Below, one piece after another: positions 17,217 through 26,855 of a stretch of 64,000 nt of DNA. Position 1 is the stretch's first letter; the number at the start of each line of letters is the position of its first letter. The DNA is taken from IMG/VR virus record IMGVR_UViG_3300025012_000028, positions 150,554 to 214,553 of that record; one strand, written 5' to 3'. Both the position numbers and the translations under genes were made by a program. Under the pieces are notes generated by a model. It did not search any database. It was not told where the DNA came from and was given only the letters and a program-made list of their open reading frames with translations.

Positions 17217-20200
17217 TTATACTAGTGTTAATGTGGTACTCCGCACTGTGCCGTCCGAACCCTTGACTTTTACCGTCAAGGTAGTGTTGTCGGTCAACTC
17301 GAAAGTCATTTCCCCGTTTACTGTTGGTGTTGCCGACGTGAGGGGAAAAGCTGAAACGTAATCCGTTGTAGGGGTGTAGGCTGCTGTACCAAGGTTTGAT
17401 GATTTCACCAGCCCGTTTATTATAAACGTCGAATAAACCCCACCGTCATTAGTGAGTAGATAACCATCGCCGGTCCCTTGATCTTGTTCATACTGGTTAA
17501 TGATAGTTGCCATCATGATGATGCCATCATGAACTGAGACCAAGGAGCCAGAGCCGAACACTGTGGACCCACTTAGACCCGCCCCCGGTGTGGCTTCTCG
17601 TGCCTGAAAGATTGTGCCGACTGCATTGGACGTAGAAACATACCCGACTTGAAGCGGCGTAAAATCAGCATCGGTGTTATTTAGTATCTTATACCACCCT
17701 CCGACCTCAATATTCGTCAAGTTCGTATAAGAAATCGGCGTGCTGGCGAAAATGGCCCTCGATTGCCGTCCAATTCCCTGTTTTGATCTCAGATCGTCAC
17801 CATTGACCCTGAGATTAAGCATATAATAGTTACCAAGAACCACACCGTAACGAACTGCTGGTGTGCCGGAAACATACCCCCCATTGCCATCTACTGTCAT
17901 ATCGAGAGTGCTGGCATACATTCCATAACTAGAGTTGCCCAACCGGAATCCGTGTGAACCGTTCTCTTGTGCTTCTATTGTACCTTGGTGGTTCGCTCCG
18001 GTGAGAATTACCGCACCTTCAAAGTCATTAGCAGCAGTACCGAAATATGGAACAATATCGACAGATGAACCTGTGGTGGAGATGTTGAGCCGTCTAGAAA
18101 GAAAAACTTTGATGTCGGAATACTGAATATTCTTGTTTGCGAATCTCGCCGCCAAACCCCAGTGCATTGCACCGCCAATCTGGATTTTCGACAATTTGCT
18201 ATCGTTGGCCTTGCCGAGGTCCAGCCCCGAACCATCGACCCGCTGAACAATCAGCCCCTCAATTACTAGGTTGCTAGCGTACCCTTCATCGTTACTAACA
18301 ACCACGCCGTGACCACCACTCAACAGATGCGCTCCAGTGCCGGAATCGCGGATATCGTCGGCTGCGAACTCCTCGCGTAGGCCGTACACGCCTCCAGCGG
18401 CCCCCGATCTGTGTCCCGCGAAGAATTCAACTCTGGTGTCGGAAAGCGTCCGGGAATAAGTGTTGTCCACACCTTGGGCAATGTATATGCCGCTCCCCAC
18501 CGAGAACAACCCCCCACCAGCCTGACCATCGACCGTAAGCCCATGGATAGACCCGTACGCGCCGGTCCAGCGAATGACATAAAGCAAGGCGTCAGCGGCG
18601 TCATCTCCGGAAGGTTTGAATCGTATCTTACTGGACGCTGAACCATCCCCGATGAGATGCACTTTTGATTTCAACTCAACATCACGCCACCACGTAACCC
18701 CGCGCGGGACAAAAACGGAGCCGCCGTTTAGCGCGGCTTGCACATCAATCGCGGCTTGCGCGGCTGCCGAATCGTCCGAGCCGTCATATTTCGCGCCGAA
18801 CCATTTAACGTTGACCGCCCCGGTGTAATCCCTCAGCCATGCAGCCGAACCGTCGCCGCCTGTCGGCACAATGACGGTGCCGTTGTTGTCGGTGTAGGTG
18901 CCCGGTGAAGCACCTGAAACCCAACGGAAATGACCTCCCCCACCATCTCCTGCCGAAGTGTGATTCTCAAGGTATATAGATGGCACAGTGCCGTTCGTGA
19001 TGCCTCGTAACGCCGTGAGGTTTGTCACGACCAAGCCATCCATAGCATCTTGCACCGCCTTGACCGCTGCCGAGTTCGCCGCCGTGGTTGTGGAGTTAGA
19101 AGTAGTGGAGGATGAAAGCTCCGATGTTGATACAATATCCCCGAACTTTAAACCACCCACAACTTTCGATGGGTCGAAATTGTGTGGACCCACAAGTACC
19201 GGTTCTAGTGCTGCCGCCACATCAACTTCAGTAGTAGGAGGATATGTCTCTGAGTTAATTTTTCGGAAGGATAAGATTGTAGTTCGTGAAGCATTACCAT
19301 CTATCAAAAGATGTTGTGCATCGGGCGCTGCCGCAGCACCTATGGTGTCCTGTCTTGACATTCCCGAAATAATACTGTTACCTTCCCCACCTGAAATACG
19401 GTAGCTCCTGCCGGGAAACTCAGCAGACCTGTTAATGTTGGCTTCCACACCGGACCCACTCAGAGTTACGGCGTTAGCACCGTCCAACCAAAAACCTAGT
19501 CCGGCCTGTTCGATATATGTGCCGTTTATATTGACTGTAGTTGGACCATATAGATAGACCCCAAGGATAATATCTCGTACACTAGAACTAATAAAAGTAT
19601 GACCGTCACCACCATCTATAAATATTCCGGCATAACCACCTTGAAAAATTTTGACCTGATCATAGGTACAAAATGCACCAGTACCCACATAAAGTGATAT
19701 ATCATTGAGGTAACGTAGATGAACATTACGTACAGTCAAATTAGTAAGTATTTCTTGGGAGCTAACATGAATATCAATACCTTTATTCCCCGTGCCGACC
19801 CATTGACCCGGACCATCTATCCCAAAATTGGATAGATATACCCAATCTGTATCGACACCTAACAATGCTGGACCATCAAAGTCAGCCTTGATAAGTCCTG
19901 AGTCCAATGGTGACACACCGAAAATACGATGTCCGTCGCGCAGTGTAAGGGGTGCTGATATTTTACACCATGCCGGAAGTAGTATACTAGTTTCTGAGTC
20001 AAGTACAGCCTGTATTGCAGCTCTATCATCCGTTATACCGTCACATACAGCGCCTCTTGTTTTAACATTGACCGCATGTGTGTCTATCTGATCCTGCACC
20101 GCCTTGGTTAAAGAGTTAATTGAAGTTTTAACCGAATTACCATTTTGAACAATAGGTACTTTTTCTAAACCAGATAGTGGTATCGTAGCTTCATTAAATT

Positions 20201-20219
20201 CAGATATTTTCTTTGCCAT
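17217..20219 (-). CDS. Tailspike with two tandem pectate-lyase-like beta-helix modules
   Basis: KKIS head; VNVKTRGAVCDG.TDDRAAIQA and VNVKWFGAK.DG.DDSAAAQAA; tail-fibre repeat linker. Confidence 0.85.
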   Translation of the reverse strand: MAKKISEFNEATIPLSGLEKVPIVQNGNSVKTSINSLTKAVQDQIDTHAVNVKTRGAVCDGITDDRAAIQAVLDSETSILLPAWCKISAPLTLRDGHRIFGVSPLDSGLIKADFDGPALLGVDTDWVYLSNFGIDGPGQWVGTGNKGIDIHVSSQEILTNLTVRNVHLRYLNDISLYVGTGAFCTYDQVKIFQGGYAGIFIDGGDGHTFISSSVRDIILGVYLYGPTTVNINGTYIEQAGLGFWLDGANAVTLSGSGVEANINRSAEFPGRSYRISGGEGNSIISGMSRQDTIGAAAAPDAQHLLIDGNASRTTILSFRKINSETYPPTTEVDVAAALEPVLVGPHNFDPSKVVGGLKFGDIVSTSELSSSTTSNSTTTAANSAAVKAVQDAMDGLVVTNLTALRGITNGTVPSIYLENHTSAGDGGGGHFRWVSGASPGTYTDNNGTVIVPTGGDGSAAWLRDYTGAVNVKWFGAKYDGSDDSAAAQAAIDVQAALNGGSVFVPRGVTWWRDVELKSKVHLIGDGSASSKIRFKPSGDDAADALLYVIRWTGAYGSIHGLTVDGQAGGGLFSVGSGIYIAQGVDNTYSRTLSDTRVEFFAGHRSGAAGGVYGLREEFAADDIRDSGTGAHLLSGGHGVVVSNDEGYASNLVIEGLIVQRVDGSGLDLGKANDSKLSKIQIGGAMHWGLAARFANKNIQYSDIKVFLSRRLNISTTGSSVDIVPYFGTAANDFEGAVILTGANHQGTIEAQENGSHGFRLGNSSYGMYASTLDMTVDGNGGYVSGTPAVRYGVVLGNYYMLNLRVNGDDLRSKQGIGRQSRAIFASTPISYTNLTNIEVGGWYKILNNTDADFTPLQVGYVSTSNAVGTIFQAREATPGAGLSGSTVFGSGSLVSVHDGIIMMATIINQYEQDQGTGDGYLLTNDGGVYSTFIINGLVKSSNLGTAAYTPTTDYVSAFPLTSATPTVNGEMTFELTDNTTLTVKVKGSDGTVRSTTLTLV

Positions 20220-20819
20220 TTAGATAAACCCCTTTGAAGCAATAAAATATGCGTCCGTCAAATCCCATCTACCACTACTCATAGAGTATTTAGAAAATTC
20301 ATTTTGAATGTTTTCAGGAAGCTTACAAAAAGTTCTAAATTTTATGTTGGTAGATAAGATCAAATCAATATTATCTTTAGAAAATTGTAGTTTATCTTTT
20401 CTAGTCATTTCTTTATAACCGGCCTTTTCTTTGAGAGAAAGCAATTCTTTTTTTGTAAGACCTAACTCTTTATTCTCTACCTTGGAAAATAGTGGTGACC
20501 GCCATTCCATCACTTTAAAAACCTTCAAAGGTATAGTGGGAAAATCTTGTTTAATTTTGATACGCAAATACCAGTTCTGCCCCGCAATAAGATCCTTTTC
20601 GCCGGAAGGAGAATCATATGATAAATCTTCTAACGTCAACATATCCGGTTTGCAAAATGAAATGAAACTACAAATTTCATTTATATTATGAATTAATAGT
20701 GCTTCATCATTCAAATCTTTAGATGATGATTGAATGAGTTTATAATCAAACAAATTTTTATCTTCTAATAAACAAAGTCCAGAAGATCGTAATGACAAAT
20801 CTATACCTAAAATCCTCAT
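20220..20819 (-). CDS. ruvC: RuvC-like Holliday junction resolvase
   Basis: ILGIDLS..SSG, LTLED, DLTDAYFIA. Confidence 0.75.
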   Translation of the reverse strand: MRILGIDLSLRSSGLCLLEDKNLFDYKLIQSSSKDLNDEALLIHNINEICSFISFCKPDMLTLEDLSYDSPSGEKDLIAGQNWYLRIKIKQDFPTIPLKVFKVMEWRSPLFSKVENKELGLTKKELLSLKEKAGYKEMTRKDKLQFSKDNIDLILSTNIKFRTFCKLPENIQNEFSKYSMSSGRWDLTDAYFIASKGFI

Positions 20820-21373
20820 ACTCTTATGTCTACCATATTAAGTTTTATTTCCGTATCTACTTCTTCTGATAATACTTGATCAATCATATTGCATCTTACT
20901 GCCCATTTACTTTGTACATATGAGAAAATTGATCCGATCATTTCTTTAAATTCAACAAAAGATAGTTGTTGTGTATTATTATCTGCATCACGTATACTCA
21001 TAATTTGATCTGGATTTAATTGCCAAACCATCAAAAGTTTTACCCAATCTATTTGTGCTTCATTTGTAATATCTATATTAAATGTTTTGTTTGTAGATAA
21101 TTCAATTTGTAACTTATAAAGTAATGAATCGATATAATTGGTTTTAATGTTGACCACTTTTTTATTTTTTAAAATATTTAAAGGAACCGGACTGGGGATA
21201 AATGGTTCTTTAACTCCGTTCTTAAATATCCATTTACCTTGTTCAGAAATAAATGATCCCCAATCTTCATCAGATATATTTATTGCTTCTATTGGAATGT
21301 TCGTTGGATCATGTGTATCATCTGAAAAAAAAGCTTGTGGATGACCATCTTCATCAAAAATACCAAATTTCAT
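20816..21373 (-). CDS. Tail fibre assembly chaperone-like (DUF4376-like)
   Basis: FF...H..IP.EAI.ISDE.W; RDADN...LS; follows fibre gene. Confidence 0.7.
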   Translation of the reverse strand: MKFGIFDEDGHPQAFFSDDTHDPTNIPIEAINISDEDWGSFISEQGKWIFKNGVKEPFIPSPVPLNILKNKKVVNIKTNYIDSLLYKLQIELSTNKTFNIDITNEAQIDWVKLLMVWQLNPDQIMSIRDADNNTQQLSFVEFKEMIGSIFSYVQSKWAVRCNMIDQVLSEEVDTEIKLNMVDIRV

Positions 21374-21382
21374 AAAAACTCC

Positions 21383-22528
21383 TTAATACCCTATCGCAAA
21401 TATTGTTGCCCATGAATTTACTGTATCATTACCAGCAATTGATTGTCTTGTCACAACCACAGAACTTGTTGTGGGGGTTCCAATTATCTGGAATACAACG
21501 TCTCCACCTACTGTATATGAAGCTATCGAAGTTCCTACTATTGCAGTCAGACAAGCATTAGGAAAGGCAATAGGAAATGTGATTGTCTGTGCTGCCGATT
21601 CGCCCCCAGGTGTTACCTCCGCTGAAACACACCACTGTAATATAACACCGCTTGGAAGTTTCTGGTAACCAAAATTACCCACAACATCTTTCTGAAAATC
21701 TGTCAAATCGAGTGCATCAGATACCATTTGAAAATCTGAGATTGGTTTGCCATTAAAAAAATTAGCATCCAATCCAGATCCCACACCATCAACACTTTTA
21801 ATTTTTGTCAATAATGATGTTGGTGTATCAGCCAAAGCAATAGGAACCCAACTTGAACCATCACCAGTTATTTTCCACGAATATATGCCGATAGGATCAT
21901 AAAATGAATCATGAGAATACTTGACATTCTCTAAAAAGAAATGTTTATCCAATATATCAAATAATTCTAAACTTCCTTTTGATAACGAAAGTTTTTTGAT
22001 TGTAATTTCATTATCACCACTATAATTATTTTTAATCTTAAATGAAATATTGGAAAAGACTTCTGAGGTTTTAAATAAGAAATAATTATCGTATGATGTA
22101 ATTAAATCAGTGGGTGTAAAAGAAGTAGATAGAATACTGTTGTTAGATAAATTTATAAACCCAGAAGAGTTGGTAAGTTCAAATCCACAATTTTGTGATG
22201 CTTCTATACTTACAACAAGAAGATAAGTTGTAGATGGTTCTAACTTGTCTGTAATATCCTGTGAAATATATTGGTTTGTTGTTCCTGAAATAAAATTTAC
22301 CACAGAATAATATCCATCGATGTCAATATCAACAGAACCTGTGTCCGCTGCCACACTCCACCCAAAAGGTAGTGTATTACCATTTAAAAAGAATTTAAGT
22401 TTAGAGTTGATTAATAAATTTTGTAAAGAAGTTTTAGCCAAACCAGTAACTATTTGATTTAGATTATTTTTCAATCCAATTAATGATGTGGTCTGTGTGG
22501 ATAAATAATTCTCATTTATTTTTGACAT
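21383..22528 (-). CDS. Tail fibre protein
   Basis: LLTKIK.VDG.GSGLDA; C-terminal GYQKLPSGVILQW, ITFPIAFPN, FAIGY. Confidence 0.8.
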   Translation of the reverse strand: MSKINENYLSTQTTSLIGLKNNLNQIVTGLAKTSLQNLLINSKLKFFLNGNTLPFGWSVAADTGSVDIDIDGYYSVVNFISGTTNQYISQDITDKLEPSTTYLLVVSIEASQNCGFELTNSSGFINLSNNSILSTSFTPTDLITSYDNYFLFKTSEVFSNISFKIKNNYSGDNEITIKKLSLSKGSLELFDILDKHFFLENVKYSHDSFYDPIGIYSWKITGDGSSWVPIALADTPTSLLTKIKSVDGVGSGLDANFFNGKPISDFQMVSDALDLTDFQKDVVGNFGYQKLPSGVILQWCVSAEVTPGGESAAQTITFPIAFPNACLTAIVGTSIASYTVGGDVVFQIIGTPTTSSVVVTRQSIAGNDTVNSWATIFAIGY

Positions 22529-24521: not shown

Positions 24522-26855
24522 TTAAACCAATGTACCTTCTGATGTAAAAACAGGAGCTACATAGGACACGACACCACCAATAACGGTGTTGGTTGCGGTA
24601 GTATCTACAGTCACATTAGTTCCGGATATAGAGACTACTTTTTTTGATGTGGTTCCTCCAATCCCCGCTACAGTGATGAAGTTTCCAACAACAATACCGG
24701 ATGTACTATCTACCACGATCACATTGCTTCCTGCTGTGGTATTTCCTGTGGTATTTCCTGAGTTCAATGTTCCGGCAGTTCCAGCAGCAGTACATGTCCA
24801 TGCGCGTATTTGCCCCACTAAGGCGGGAGTTCGTACCACTCTATCATTAATTTTCCATGTGCCAGTAGTAGGAATTGCTGATTGATAAACTGTCCGATAT
24901 GCATTGGTAACTATAGTCGCATGACTTCCGCTGATAGATGATGCGATATTATTCAGTATGTAACTCTTACCAATACAATATATCACATCACTATAATTGC
25001 CTTTTAGAACATTATTGGTGATGATTGCGGTGGCATTAACGTCACCGCCCACTAACATAGAATATGAGTCATATGAATTGTTGGTGATTGTGTTACCATC
25101 AAATATTGACGTACCCGTCAAAGATGGGTTCAATACTACGGCACTATTGCCCCCATCAAAATGCGCCCCCATCACAGAACTATGCTCTGCATAAGCAATA
25201 TATAGAGTACGCTCGGTGTTTTTGAAGATACCACCTTGGATCTTGATATATGCGTTGGCCGATAATGATCTAAATCCGTTTCGCACTGTTGAGTTTAGAC
25301 CTACCTGTAAATTATGGAACTCCAACTTTTTATAGGTAGAATCGCTTTCTATCAACACCCCATATTCTGCATTATCCACTCTGACATTTGATATTATCAC
25401 GTTCTGTGTGGGGTAACCAACAAAGTAGAGTCCCTCTGTTCCTTTACCGACATAGACAGTCGGGGGGTCGGGTGGTACTGATGCGGGTGGAATAATTACT
25501 GTGGTGTCTGTGTAACCACTCCCACCATCATCGACAATGTAATTAACCACTTTATCACTTTCATCGCCCGTACCAAGCACAGCATGTATCTGTGCGATTC
25601 TTCCACCCGCTCCGTAAATGCGAACATTCGGCGCGGTAACATAACCCTCTCCTAACGTTACGGGCGTCACGGCAGTGACAGCATCACCTATTACCGTGGC
25701 AATTGCTGTAGCACCCGATCCACCACCATCATTTGCTAGGTAGCCAGAAATCCGCACGTTGTCGATAAAACCAACCACATTACCCGAAAACCGAATACCA
25801 TGTGTCGAGGTTGCTAACGTGTTTCGCATCCAACAATTGTTGATATTAAAGGTAGTTGTTTGGTAAGTGGTTGGGTCCATACCACCCACACTCATACAAT
25901 CCCTATAATGAGATCCATCAAATTTACATTCACTGATATTACAGTTTCTTGATTCCCACAAATAAATATTGGATCTAGGAGTACGTCCGAAATAACAGCG
26001 AGAAACATAAACATCGTTAGACATTGATGTAATGAACCCATACCCAACTCCAATGTCACCGGGAAGGTCTTTGATGATCATATCTACCATTTTAAATCCA
26101 TCTACTTTGTAGATATGAACTCCGGTCGTACCATTTGTTGTGGTAACTTCGGATATATTACCATCAATTGTTATTCCATATATGGCAATATTTTTGGTGA
26201 ACGACGATGGATCAGTATTTTCGTCCCAACTAATTGTGGTATCATTTCCTAAGAAGTACCTAGTAGTAGTATAACTCCCCGCCTCAAGTTTGAGTGTTGC
26301 ACCATAACCCATGATGGTGGTATTATCATATATGCGCAACAGATCACCACTGACAGTATAGGTTTTTCCTGATGTAAACTCCACTGTCTGTCCTGCTCCT
26401 GCCTTTAGTGCCTGAATTATTGCGGGGGCATCGTTAGTACCCTCACCTTTGGCACCAAACCACCCAACTTTAACTGTACCTTTTAATCCAGTTATATACC
26501 CTGTACCATCAAATTTTTGTTCGTCAGTCCATTTTGATGTACTGCCACCATAAAAAATGCTATGTGATCCATGAATTATCTTTGCTCCATTGAATGGAAG
26601 TAACTCGATGTTAGATTCAATTGATAGAGGAGCAGTAATTGGTAAATCTGTTTCATATACCAATGCAACTTTGGTTGTAGTTCCTATAGCACTGACTGCT
26701 GCGACTAAAGAACCATATTGAGCAACATTTACCCAAGGGTGAAGATCCTTCAATTTGGTATGGACGTTATCACCATCTTGAACTAACGGCAAAAGTTCTT
26801 CGCCAGTTAAGGAGGTCACGTTAGTAGTTTCTGAAATCTTCTTAGACATTATCAA
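24522..26855 (-). CDS. Tailspike, beta-helix
   Basis: KKIS head; VKVGWFGAKG.GTNDAPAI; beta-helix repeats; PTTGTW..DRV C-terminus. Confidence 0.85.
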   Translation of the reverse strand: MIMSKKISETTNVTSLTGEELLPLVQDGDNVHTKLKDLHPWVNVAQYGSLVAAVSAIGTTTKVALVYETDLPITAPLSIESNIELLPFNGAKIIHGSHSIFYGGSTSKWTDEQKFDGTGYITGLKGTVKVGWFGAKGEGTNDAPAIIQALKAGAGQTVEFTSGKTYTVSGDLLRIYDNTTIMGYGATLKLEAGSYTTTRYFLGNDTTISWDENTDPSSFTKNIAIYGITIDGNISEVTTTNGTTGVHIYKVDGFKMVDMIIKDLPGDIGVGYGFITSMSNDVYVSRCYFGRTPRSNIYLWESRNCNISECKFDGSHYRDCMSVGGMDPTTYQTTTFNINNCWMRNTLATSTHGIRFSGNVVGFIDNVRISGYLANDGGGSGATAIATVIGDAVTAVTPVTLGEGYVTAPNVRIYGAGGRIAQIHAVLGTGDESDKVVNYIVDDGGSGYTDTTVIIPPASVPPDPPTVYVGKGTEGLYFVGYPTQNVIISNVRVDNAEYGVLIESDSTYKKLEFHNLQVGLNSTVRNGFRSLSANAYIKIQGGIFKNTERTLYIAYAEHSSVMGAHFDGGNSAVVLNPSLTGTSIFDGNTITNNSYDSYSMLVGGDVNATAIITNNVLKGNYSDVIYCIGKSYILNNIASSISGSHATIVTNAYRTVYQSAIPTTGTWKINDRVVRTPALVGQIRAWTCTAAGTAGTLNSGNTTGNTTAGSNVIVVDSTSGIVVGNFITVAGIGGTTSKKVVSISGTNVTVDTTATNTVIGGVVSYVAPVFTSEGTLV

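What the first reader, a model, noticed from the sequence alone, without database searches (positions are those of the whole stretch)
17217..20219. Double tailspike: two beta-helix modules in one chain, with in-frame flanking repeat and GC-rich imported segment
Seen: two tailspike entry motifs, each preceded by KAVQD. The DNA repeat atc(t/c)tgcaccgccttg occurs at 19047-19062 and 20091-20106, 1044 bp apart (in frame). GC is 43/60 at 18361-18420 versus 11/60 at 21121-21180. Inference: recent module capture from a high-GC donor; recombination between the repeats would delete module 1 cleanly, giving a host-range switch.
Basis: partly seen in the sequence, partly recalled or inferred. Interest (0 to 1): 0.6.

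Follow-up and report, generated by a model that had tools for sequence, protein, structure and literature searches.

The report
Two-in-one phage tailspike protein
A giant groundwater phage encodes one 1000-residue tail protein that joins two different sugar-cutting "tailspike" modules, which in other phages of the same aquifer are separate, interchangeable proteins; this is an unusual but not unprecedented product of the ordinary shuffling of host-recognition modules.

Summary
ORF 17217-20219 (minus strand, 1000 aa) lies in the tail-gene block of a 214.5-kb viral contig. It contains two unrelated right-handed beta-helix tailspike modules, residues 48-361 and 398-942. A Ser/Thr-rich linker with a helical KAVQD neck (362-397) joins them.

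- **Structure:** each module folds confidently on its own. Both match CBA120 TSP2 best.
- **Stand-alone relatives:** module 1 has P0002 (399 aa, 81% identity). Module 2 has P0014 (639 aa, 87%). These two are alternative alleles at one syntenic locus in other phages of the same aquifer.
- **Real fusion:** the same ORF was assembled on 13 contigs from several samples.
- **Selection:** both modules are under strong purifying selection.
- **GC import:** only the linker plus module 2 is compositionally foreign (GC3 about 0.46-0.61, against 0.12-0.34 for the anchor and neighbouring genes). This stretch includes the GC maximum of the whole genome. Module 1 looks native (GC3 0.31).
- **The repeat:** the 16-nt repeat is real and in frame, but it simply encodes the conserved KAVQD neck motif that each module carries. 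No deletion joint was found.

"Recent" capture and a repeat-driven host-range switch remain unproven. Tandem beta-helix fibre proteins have been predicted before, so I file this as a new variant of a known kind.

The parts
17217..20219 (-). Whole gene: 1000-aa hetero-tandem double tailspike (P0001), including the stop codon at 17217-17219
   Evidence: an identical ORF is found on 13 contigs
20109..20219 (-). N-terminal virion anchor, residues 1-37. It is AT-rich (GC3 about 0.12) and shared with the second tailspike of this phage.
   Evidence: 46% identity to the N-terminus of the ORF at 24522-26849; GC3 profile
20091..20106 (-). Repeat copy 1: encodes KAVQD (residues 39-43), the helical cap directly before the module 1 entry motif
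   Evidence: helix 30-47 in the model
19137..20078 (-). Module 1: right-handed parallel beta-helix, residues 48-361, GC3 0.31 (native-like)
   Evidence: pLDDT above 90. Foldseek best match is CBA120 TSP2, E 1e-7. The stand-alone homolog P0002 is 81% identical, and many 337-370-aa homologs end at this boundary. Predicted homotrimer ipSAE 0.97, best control 0.00.
19029..19136 (-). Inter-module linker, residues 362-397: a Ser/Thr-rich stretch followed by a helical neck with a Phage_fiber_2-like motif. GC3 is 0.58, and the compositional break lies at its 5' edge.
   Evidence: The same linker (73% identity) joins modules in P0143. The 87 nt at 19038-19124 are 85% identical to a different contig in all four runs.
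19047..19062 (-). Repeat copy 2: encodes KAVQD (residues 387-391) in the neck helix of module 2
18822..19028 (-). N-domain of module 2, residues 398-466 (precomputed PF27114 Phage_tail_beta). This is the most widely shared part of the protein.
17394..18821 (-). Module 2: right-handed parallel beta-helix, residues 467-942, GC3 0.46-0.61
   Evidence: PF12708 at 55 bits. AF2 pLDDT 88.5. Foldseek best match is CBA120 TSP2, E 4e-14. P0014 is 87% identical.
17220..17393 (-). C-terminal tail, residues 943-1000: a disordered stretch followed by a small three-stranded beta domain (about 971-998). The stand-alone module 1 and module 2 proteins both carry this domain.
   Evidence: 67% identity to the C-terminus of an 825-aa protein of Sinorhizobium phage AP-16-3

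Best explanation
This is a genuine single-chain receptor-binding tailspike of a roughly 215-kb groundwater phage, built from two different complete tailspike cassettes joined head to tail. The order of parts is: a 37-residue anchor shared with the phage's other tailspike, then beta-helix module 1, then a Ser/Thr-rich linker and helical neck, then a small N-domain, then beta-helix module 2, then a small C-terminal beta domain. By analogy with solved tailspikes it should assemble as a homotrimer, with a proximal trimer of module 1 helices and a distal trimer of module 2 helices. That would present two different glycan-binding or glycan-cleaving surfaces on one spike (inferred). The likeliest origin is that a GC-rich piece (linker, N-domain, module 2 and C-domain) from a higher-GC phage lineage was recombined onto the 3' end of a P0002-like gene (anchor, module 1, C-domain). 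The right-hand crossover would lie in or beyond the homologous C-terminal domain. The left-hand crossover would lie just after the last rung of module 1 (inferred). The two KAVQD-coding 16-mers are each module's own conserved neck motif, not target-site duplications. What is shown: the two folds, the modular homologs, the allelic cassette locus in relatives, the compositional break, purifying selection on both modules, and the reality of the fusion. What is inferred: two enzymatic specificities, the stacked trimer, and the order of events.
For: Two independent beta-helix folds were predicted (module 1 pLDDT 84.8 with residues 48-361 above 90; module 2 pLDDT 88.5). A low-confidence linker lies between them. 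Both models match phage tailspikes best, with CBA120 TSP2 first. The two modules share no significant sequence similarity. Stand-alone homologs exist: P0002 (399 aa, 81% identity over residues 50-373) and P0014 (639 aa, 87% over 398-999). P0002 and P0014 occupy the same locus between 79-83% identical flanks and share their first 97 and last 103 nt, so they are cassette alleles. In 1.84 billion representative proteins, every hit matches only one of the two modules. The fusion ORF is identical on 13 contigs from several samples and assemblers, and a 26-kb contig spans it without differences. GC3 steps from about 0.31 to 0.58 at residue 365 or so. This stretch is the GC maximum of the genome. P0015, 51% identical to module 2, sits in a 61%-GC phage contig. 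Selection is purifying: module 1 has dN 0.12 with saturated dS; module 2 has dN 0.089, dS 1.74, ratio 0.05. All family-conserved acidic and polar residues are retained in both modules. The module 1 homotrimer model scores ipSAE 0.97 against a best control of 0.00. That mark was reached by 20 of 30 solved pairs and 1 of 23 single chains; contact agreement was at least 92% and pLDDT at least 93. The anchor is shared with the second tailspike. The same linker joins modules in P0143.
Against: No full-length or full-length-trimer model could be made. The only whole-chain alignment (A1) was misaligned, so the relative arrangement of the two modules is not modelled. Enzymatic activity, substrates and host are unknown. 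The order of fusion events is inferred from composition and domain boundaries only. The representative library clusters at 50% identity, and P0001 itself is hidden under P0014, so other fused relatives could be hidden in the same way. The trimer pass may reflect the model's memory of solved tailspike trimers.
Confidence: 0.75

Rival explanations
1. One reading: the two 16-nt KAVQD repeats act as a recombination switch. Deletion between them removes module 1 in frame and changes host range. The double form is then one state of a recurrent switch.
For: The repeat is real and 1044 nt (348 codons) apart. The predicted product (anchor, KAVQD, N-domain, module 2) would have the same architecture as the natural protein P0014. 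The G-ending codons of the N-terminal copy are unusual for the AT-rich anchor, p about 0.008. A RuvC-like resolvase gene abuts the tailspike start.
Against: Only 12 consecutive identical bases are shared. No contig in four runs joins the copies. No protein of 550-1750 aa with this anchor other than P0001 itself was found in 5.8 billion clusters. The motif is a generic neck motif found in many fibre proteins. Comparable short repeats are common in this region.
Confidence: 0.08
2. Module 1 is no longer an enzyme or receptor binder. It serves only as a rigid trimeric stalk or adapter that holds the distal, functional module 2 away from the tail.
For: Module 1 sits where other module 2-type proteins carry N-terminal anchor domains of 100-330 aa. 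P0063 also has a module 1-type helix at its N-terminus, followed by a long fibre and an S74 chaperone domain. Compared with P0002, module 1 has lost its C-terminal domain.
Against: dN is 0.12 with saturated dS against the stand-alone P0002. All family-wide conserved acidic and polar residues are retained: D123, D173, D205, E237, E259, D291, E331. Many stand-alone homologs also lack a C-terminal domain. Purifying selection would, however, also act on a purely structural stalk.
Confidence: 0.15
3. The ORF yields two proteins, either by proteolysis in the Ser/Thr-rich linker or by internal initiation at Met393. The virion would then carry two separate spikes, as in the relatives.
For: The linker is predicted to be disordered (pLDDT below 50 for residues 364-379). 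An in-frame ATG (Met393) lies 5 codons before the N-domain.
Against: No convincing Shine-Dalgarno sequence at proper spacing precedes Met393, and no promoter-like site lies near the linker on the coding strand. A module 2 product made this way would lack any anchor. No S74-type self-cleaving domain was detected.
Confidence: 0.07
4. The fusion is a metagenome assembly chimera that joined two tailspike genes through the shared motif.
For: The stand-alone relatives of both modules occur in the same aquifer samples. The linker is shared with other contigs.
Against: The identical ORF occurs on 13 contigs from at least five assemblies and several samples made with different assemblers, up to 214 kb long. 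A 26,450-nt contig in X1 and X2 has no differences. The relatives are only 75-78% identical in DNA, too divergent to be co-assembled.
Confidence: 0.02

Closest known systems
Bacteriophage CBA120 tailspike TSP2 (PDB 5w6p, 6w4q) and other trimeric beta-helix tailspikes (Sf6, Det7, Acinetobacter and Klebsiella depolymerases)
   Same: Right-handed parallel beta-helix fold. It is the best structural match for both modules (E 1e-7 and 4e-14). Both have an N-terminal attachment part followed by a helix. Module 1 is predicted to form a trimer.
   Different: The solved tailspikes listed carry one beta-helix per chain, whereas this protein has two unrelated ones in series. Sequence identity is only 14-18%.
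Multi-spike phages with separate chains (Klebsiella KP32 gp37/gp38, phiK64-1, the branched TSP complexes of Ackermannviridae)
   Same: One virion carries several glycan specificities, and modules are swapped between anchors (PMC8262889; abstracts). This phage also has a second tailspike with the same anchor.
   Different: In those phages each specificity is a separate polypeptide docked on another. Here two modules are covalently joined in one chain.
Tail fibre proteins of gut phages BK025033_ct6IQ4 and BK046881_ctckW2 (phAss-1 group) with 'two pectate lyase domains' (PMC10607447)
   Same: [quoted passage not shown]
   Different: No sequence relationship was tested or seen. Stand-alone allelic homologs of each module, a compositional break and a linker motif were not reported there.
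P0169 (703 aa, metagenomic phage, next to baseplate genes)
   Same: Two beta-helix units in tandem in one phage tail protein. Both belong to the module 1 family.
   Different: It is a homo-tandem: an internal duplication in which both halves are 24-27% identical to module 1. It has no Ser/Thr linker and no second family.
Phage tail fibre repeat PF03406 (Phage_fiber_2) as found in mosaic tail fibres
   Same: The linker motif matches residues 368-392. The same motif separates modules in P0143, where it passes the Pfam cut-off at 29.7 bits.
   Different: In P0001 the match (19.1 bits) is below the 22-bit cut-off, and there is a single copy rather than a repeat array.

Membership tests
Phage tailspike / pectate-lyase-like beta-helix (PF12708 Pect-lyase_RHGA_epim) | Sequence match to the family model above its curated cut-off | tested here: met
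   55 bits against a cut-off of 27, in 2 stretches, best at 469-538. Module 1 alone is weak in Pfam, but its homologs carry PF12708.
Phage tailspike / pectate-lyase-like beta-helix (PF12708 Pect-lyase_RHGA_epim) | Right-handed parallel beta-helix fold | tested here: met
   AF2 models of both modules have high confidence. The top Foldseek hits are tailspikes.
Phage tailspike / pectate-lyase-like beta-helix (PF12708 Pect-lyase_RHGA_epim) | Homotrimer with helices packed side by side | tested here: met
   Tested for module 1 only, and by prediction only. ipSAE was 0.97 against a best control of 0.00. That mark was reached by 20 of 30 solved pairs and 1 of 23 single chains; contacts agreed at 92% or more and pLDDT was 93 or more. 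The interface runs along residues 48-365. Module 2 and the full chain were not tested.
Phage tailspike / pectate-lyase-like beta-helix (PF12708 Pect-lyase_RHGA_epim) | Encoded among tail genes, with an N-terminal virion-attachment part | tested here: met
   The neighbours include a tail fibre (PF21882, phrog_4209), a second tailspike and a 1575-aa protein. The anchor is shared with the second tailspike.
Phage tailspike / pectate-lyase-like beta-helix (PF12708 Pect-lyase_RHGA_epim) | Polysaccharide depolymerase or binding activity | not testable with these tools
   The only indirect evidence is conserved acidic residues and low dN/dS.
PF27114 Phage_tail_beta (N-domain of module 2) | Match to the family model | tested here: met
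   A precomputed Pfam hit is listed for P0001 and for most homologs of residues 397-510. The local Pfam copy does not hold this model.
PF03406 Phage tail fibre repeat | Match above the curated cut-off | tested here: inconclusive
   19.1 bits against a cut-off of 22, E 0.00096, at residues 368-392. The 73%-identical linker of P0143 passes at 29.7 bits.
Endosialidase-type tailspikes with a C-terminal intramolecular chaperone (PF13884 Peptidase_S74) | S74 chaperone domain at the C-terminus | tested here: not met
   P0001 has no hit. The C-terminus is a small beta domain shared with P0002 and P0014. P0063, a relative of module 1, does have S74.
Programmed DNA-rearrangement host-range switches (repeat-mediated deletion or inversion) | Both rearranged forms detectable in the population | tested here: not met
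   No joint links the repeats in the contigs of 4 runs. No protein with the deleted architecture and this anchor was found. Only contigs were available, so rare forms would be missed.

The most novel reading that the evidence does not exclude
The Ser/Thr-rich stretch with its KAVQD neck may be a general in-frame splice joint for tailspike cassettes. If so, the double spike would be a caught intermediate of host-range change by an 'add first, lose later' route. A phage would append a foreign module distal to its old one, keep both under selection so that it has dual specificity, and could later shed either one through the short neck homology. The linker would then be a portable connector that lets whole trimeric beta-helix modules be stacked in series.
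Probability: 0.2. Interest if true: 0.7.

Novelty: new variant of a known kind. Interest (0 to 1): 0.45.

Why it matters
Tailspike modules set phage host range and are the parts swapped when phages are engineered. In this natural case two complete, selectively maintained modules from different families sit in one chain. Their single-module versions still circulate as alleles in the same aquifer. The case therefore defines exact domain boundaries and a natural connector for stacking modules. It also gives a concrete system for testing whether two specificities can work in series on one spike. Finally, it shows that modules move between unrelated phage lineages with very different GC content.

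Tried and rejected
- **Phage collection:** megablast of the gene and of 14 kb of neighbouring genes found nothing. tblastn found only a 45-aa C-terminal match.
- **Whole-chain alignment:** alignment A1 put the N-terminal parts of module 2 homologs onto module 1. I discarded it and folded the modules separately, so there is no full-length model.
- **Solved structures by sequence:** only marginal hits to iota-carrageenase, E 0.015.
- **Relatives of the jumbo phage in IMG/VR:** searches with the two upstream proteins and with module 2 gave nothing. The state of this locus in close kin is therefore unknown.
- **Other proteins with this anchor:** a search with residues 1-50 found only P0001 itself.
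- **Deletion joint:** none in the contigs of four runs. Only Logan contigs were available, not raw reads.
- **Simple read-through fusion of adjacent genes:** rejected, because the relatives carry the modules as alleles at one locus rather than as neighbouring genes.
- **High GC as an amino-acid effect:** rejected for module 2, where GC3 is itself high. Accepted for module 1.
- **Internal promoter or terminator at the linker:** nothing convincing.
Full report
**Context.** The window is the last 64 kb of a 214,553-bp linear IMG/VR virus record, estimated 90% complete, with 36.5% GC. The finding is one ORF, 17217-20219 on the minus strand, encoding 1000 aa (P0001). It lies in a run of co-oriented structural genes:
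- a 1575-aa protein;
- a 775-aa tailspike-like protein at 24522-26849;
- a 381-aa tail fibre (PF21882 Gp53-like_C, phrog_4209);
- a 199-aa RuvC-like ORF that ends exactly where the tailspike starts.

**Checking the observation.**
- KAVQD occurs at residues 39-43 and 387-391. Beta-helix entry motifs begin at residues 50 and 469.
- The 16-nt repeat (19047-19062 and 20091-20106) matches at 15 of 16 positions and is 1044 nt apart, so it is in frame. It is the only such pair in the window, with none expected in shuffles.
- The GC counts of 43/60 and 11/60 are exact.
- The repeat is the coding sequence of the pentapeptide plus one base. Given the peptide, the codon match has p of about 0.008 under this phage's codon usage.
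- The same 4.5 kb holds nine other short two-copy repeats. As DNA, the repeat is only mildly remarkable.

**Anatomy.**
- Pfam finds PF12708 (55 bits, two stretches), a sub-threshold Beta_helix match in residues 157-270, and a sub-threshold Phage_fiber_2 match at 368-392. PHROGs gives tail, tailspike and EPS-depolymerase families.
- AlphaFold2 on separate alignments gave two confident, independent right-handed beta-helices. In the module 1 model, residues 48-361 have pLDDT above 90, preceded by a helix at 30-47.
- The module 2 model has a neck helix at 379-394, a small N-domain at 398-466, a long beta-helix to about 942, a disordered stretch, and a three-stranded C-terminal domain at about 971-998.
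- Residues 364-379 are of low confidence in both models.
- Both models match phage tailspikes best, with CBA120 TSP2 first.
- The two modules share no significant sequence similarity beyond short motifs. This is a hetero-tandem, not an internal duplication.
- Three copies of module 1 (residues 45-365) gave a predicted trimer. ipSAE was 0.97 against a best control of 0.00. That mark was reached by 20 of 30 solved pairs and 1 of 23 single chains. Contacts agreed at 92% or more and pLDDT was 93 or more. The interface runs the length of the helix. This is support, not proof, and it may reflect the model's memory of solved tailspike trimers.

**Modular homologs.**
- Module 1 has stand-alone relatives of 337-564 aa. 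The closest is P0002 (399 aa, 81% identity over residues 50-373). Many of these relatives end exactly where module 1 ends.
- Module 2 has P0014 (639 aa, 87% identity over residues 398-999) and many more distant relatives.
- P0002 and P0014 come from the same aquifer study as the window. They sit at the same locus in two related phages, whose flanks are 79-83% identical. One is on a 95-kb viral contig, L018.
- P0002 and P0014 share their first 97 nt (87% identity) and last 103 nt (83% identity) but have different cores. This is a classic cassette exchange between a common short anchor and a common C-terminal domain.
- P0001 carries both cores in one chain, behind a different anchor. The C-terminal domain that follows module 1 in P0002 is missing after module 1 in P0001. 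It is present only once, at the end of the chain.
- In a search of 1.84 billion representative proteins, every listed hit matched only one of the two modules. One caveat applies: clustering at 50% identity hides P0001 itself under P0014.

**Is the fusion real?** The identical 1000-aa ORF occurs on 13 contigs. These come from at least five assemblies and several samples and were made with different assemblers.
- In runs X1 and X2, a 26,450-nt contig covers 16537-21000 without a single difference.
- In X4, which is not marked as a possible source, perfect pieces cover 18753-19129 and 19156-20036. The listed pieces leave 26 nt at the module 1/linker boundary unbridged.
- The stand-alone relatives are only 75-78% identical in DNA, too divergent to be co-assembled.
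- A chimera is therefore very unlikely.

**Composition.** Third-position GC separates amino-acid effects from foreign origin.

| Segment | GC3 |
|---|---|
| Anchor (first 35 codons) | about 0.12 |
| Module 1 | 0.31 |
| Linker | 0.58 |
| Module 2 N-domain and first half of helix | 0.59-0.61 |
| Module 2 second half of helix | 0.46 |
| C-terminal tail | 0.50 |
| Neighbouring genes | 0.17-0.34 |

- The step lies at about residue 365, the boundary between module 1 and the linker.
- Window 18196-19095 is the GC maximum of the whole genome (z = 5.3).
- The imported part is therefore the linker plus module 2, not module 1.
- P0014 has the same GC3 (0.61) inside another low-GC phage.
- P0015, 51% identical to module 2, lies in a 61%-GC phage contig with GC3 of about 0.72.
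- A high-GC phage lineage as the source is thus plausible.
- 'Recent' is not shown. Module 2 and P0014 differ at saturated synonymous sites (dS 1.74), so they are not a fresh common import.

**Selection.**
- Module 1 against P0002 has dN 0.12 with saturated dS.
- Module 2 against P0014 has dN 0.089 and dN/dS of about 0.05.
- P0001 keeps every family-wide conserved acidic or polar residue in both modules.
- Neither module looks like a decaying remnant.

**The linker and the repeat.**
- The N-domain boundary, a conserved (L/I)-x-A-L-R motif at residues 400-404, is conserved in many relatives that have quite different upstream parts.
- The Ser/Thr-rich stretch with its AVKAVQD neck recurs in P0069, directly before the same N-domain.
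- It also recurs at 73% identity in P0143, where it sits between a beta-helix part and a different C-terminal part and passes the PF03406 cut-off.
- In the metagenomes, 87 nt of the linker (19038-19124) are 85% identical to another contig in all four runs, with unlike sequence on both sides.
- The linker therefore behaves as a shared joint between fibre modules.
- The N-terminal KAVQD belongs to the helical cap just before the module 1 entry motif, which module 1 relatives also carry in similar form.
- The two 16-mers are best read as each module's own neck motif.

**Deletion switch.**
- Deletion between the repeats would be in frame. It would yield an architecture like that of P0014.
- But no joint was found, and no such protein with this anchor exists in the searched collection.
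- Only 12 bases match perfectly.
- Because only contigs were available, rare variants cannot be excluded.

**Anchor.** Residues 1-37 are 46% identical to the N-terminus of the second tailspike at 24522-26849. This suggests that both spikes dock to the same virion site or adaptor through a common peptide (inferred).

**Mechanism proposed.**
- One trimeric spike carries a proximal module 1 trimer and a distal module 2 trimer.
- This gives the phage two glycan specificities on one attachment site. They could serve alternative hosts, or they could act on successive surface layers of one host.
- The likeliest origin is the addition of a GC-rich piece (linker, N-domain, module 2, C-domain) to the 3' end of a P0002-like gene, with the right-hand crossover in the homologous C-terminal domain.
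- Shown: the folds, the modularity, the allelic cassettes, the compositional break, the purifying selection, and the reality of the fusion.
- Inferred: catalysis, the stacked geometry, and the order of events.

**Comparison with what is known.**
- Beta-helix tailspikes, module swapping, and multi-spike virions built from separate chains are well known (PMC8262889; abstracts).
- Tandem pectate-lyase-like domains in one tail fibre chain have been predicted for a group of gut phages (PMC10607447).
- P0169 is a metagenomic homo-tandem of module 1-type helices.
- New here is a hetero-tandem whose two parts both still exist as stand-alone alleles in the same habitat, with a clear compositional seam and a recognisable connector.
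- I rate it a new variant of a known kind, of moderate interest.

**Limits.**
- There is no full-length model and no raw reads.
- Host and substrates are unknown.
- No close relatives of the jumbo phage were found.

Noticed in passing
window 24522-26849 (-): A second tailspike-like protein (775 aa from the ATG at 26849). It has its own beta-helix entry motif. Its N-terminal 37 residues are 46% identical to the anchor of the double tailspike. Its residues 42-200 are homologous to the tailspike gene that lies downstream of the P0002/P0014 cassette in the related phages. It has no Pfam hit.
   Followed up: partly
window 20220-20819 (-): A 199-aa ORF ends exactly where the tailspike gene starts. 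It looks like a phage RuvC-family Holliday-junction resolvase (phrog_159, E 1.8e-6; ESM Atlas feature score 0.94 to RuvC clusters). This is a recombination enzyme gene inside the tail-fibre block. Any link to module exchange is untested.
   Followed up: partly
window 21383-22528 (-): A 381-aa tail fibre protein with a Gp53-like C-terminal domain (precomputed PF21882; phrog_4209, E 2e-16). The phage therefore carries at least three receptor-binding candidates in 10 kb.
   Followed up: no
G000:C1:99202-103643 (outside the window): A second GC-rich island in the same genome (900-nt peaks of 0.559 and 0.521 against a mean of 0.365). It may be another imported segment or RNA genes. I did not examine it.
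   Followed up: no
window 17220-17360 (-); L017 4001-4135: The last 45 or so residues of the protein are 67% identical to the C-terminus of an 825-aa hypothetical protein of Sinorhizobium phage AP-16-3 (OP484857.1, 17756-20233). They are also shared by P0002 and P0014. This is a small, widely travelled C-terminal domain of unknown role.
   Followed up: partly
L005 483-1304 versus L003 2-1327: In the related phages, the gene upstream of the tailspike cassette is itself mosaic. Its last 95 or so residues are conserved, but the N-terminal part is replaced in L005 by a different 273-aa ORF. This is a second exchange point in the same locus.
   Followed up: no
window 18930-18948 and 19599-19617: A second short repeat between the two modules (19 nt, 84% identity). 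It encodes the Gly-rich motifs DGGGGH (module 2 N-domain) and DGGDGH (module 1). It is probably convergent motif coding.
   Followed up: no
window 18648-18902 in run X5 (sediment metagenome): Contig pieces about 88-91% identical to part of module 2 occur alongside perfect pieces. Closer variants of module 2 than P0014 therefore exist in a second study. Their gene context is unknown.
   Followed up: no
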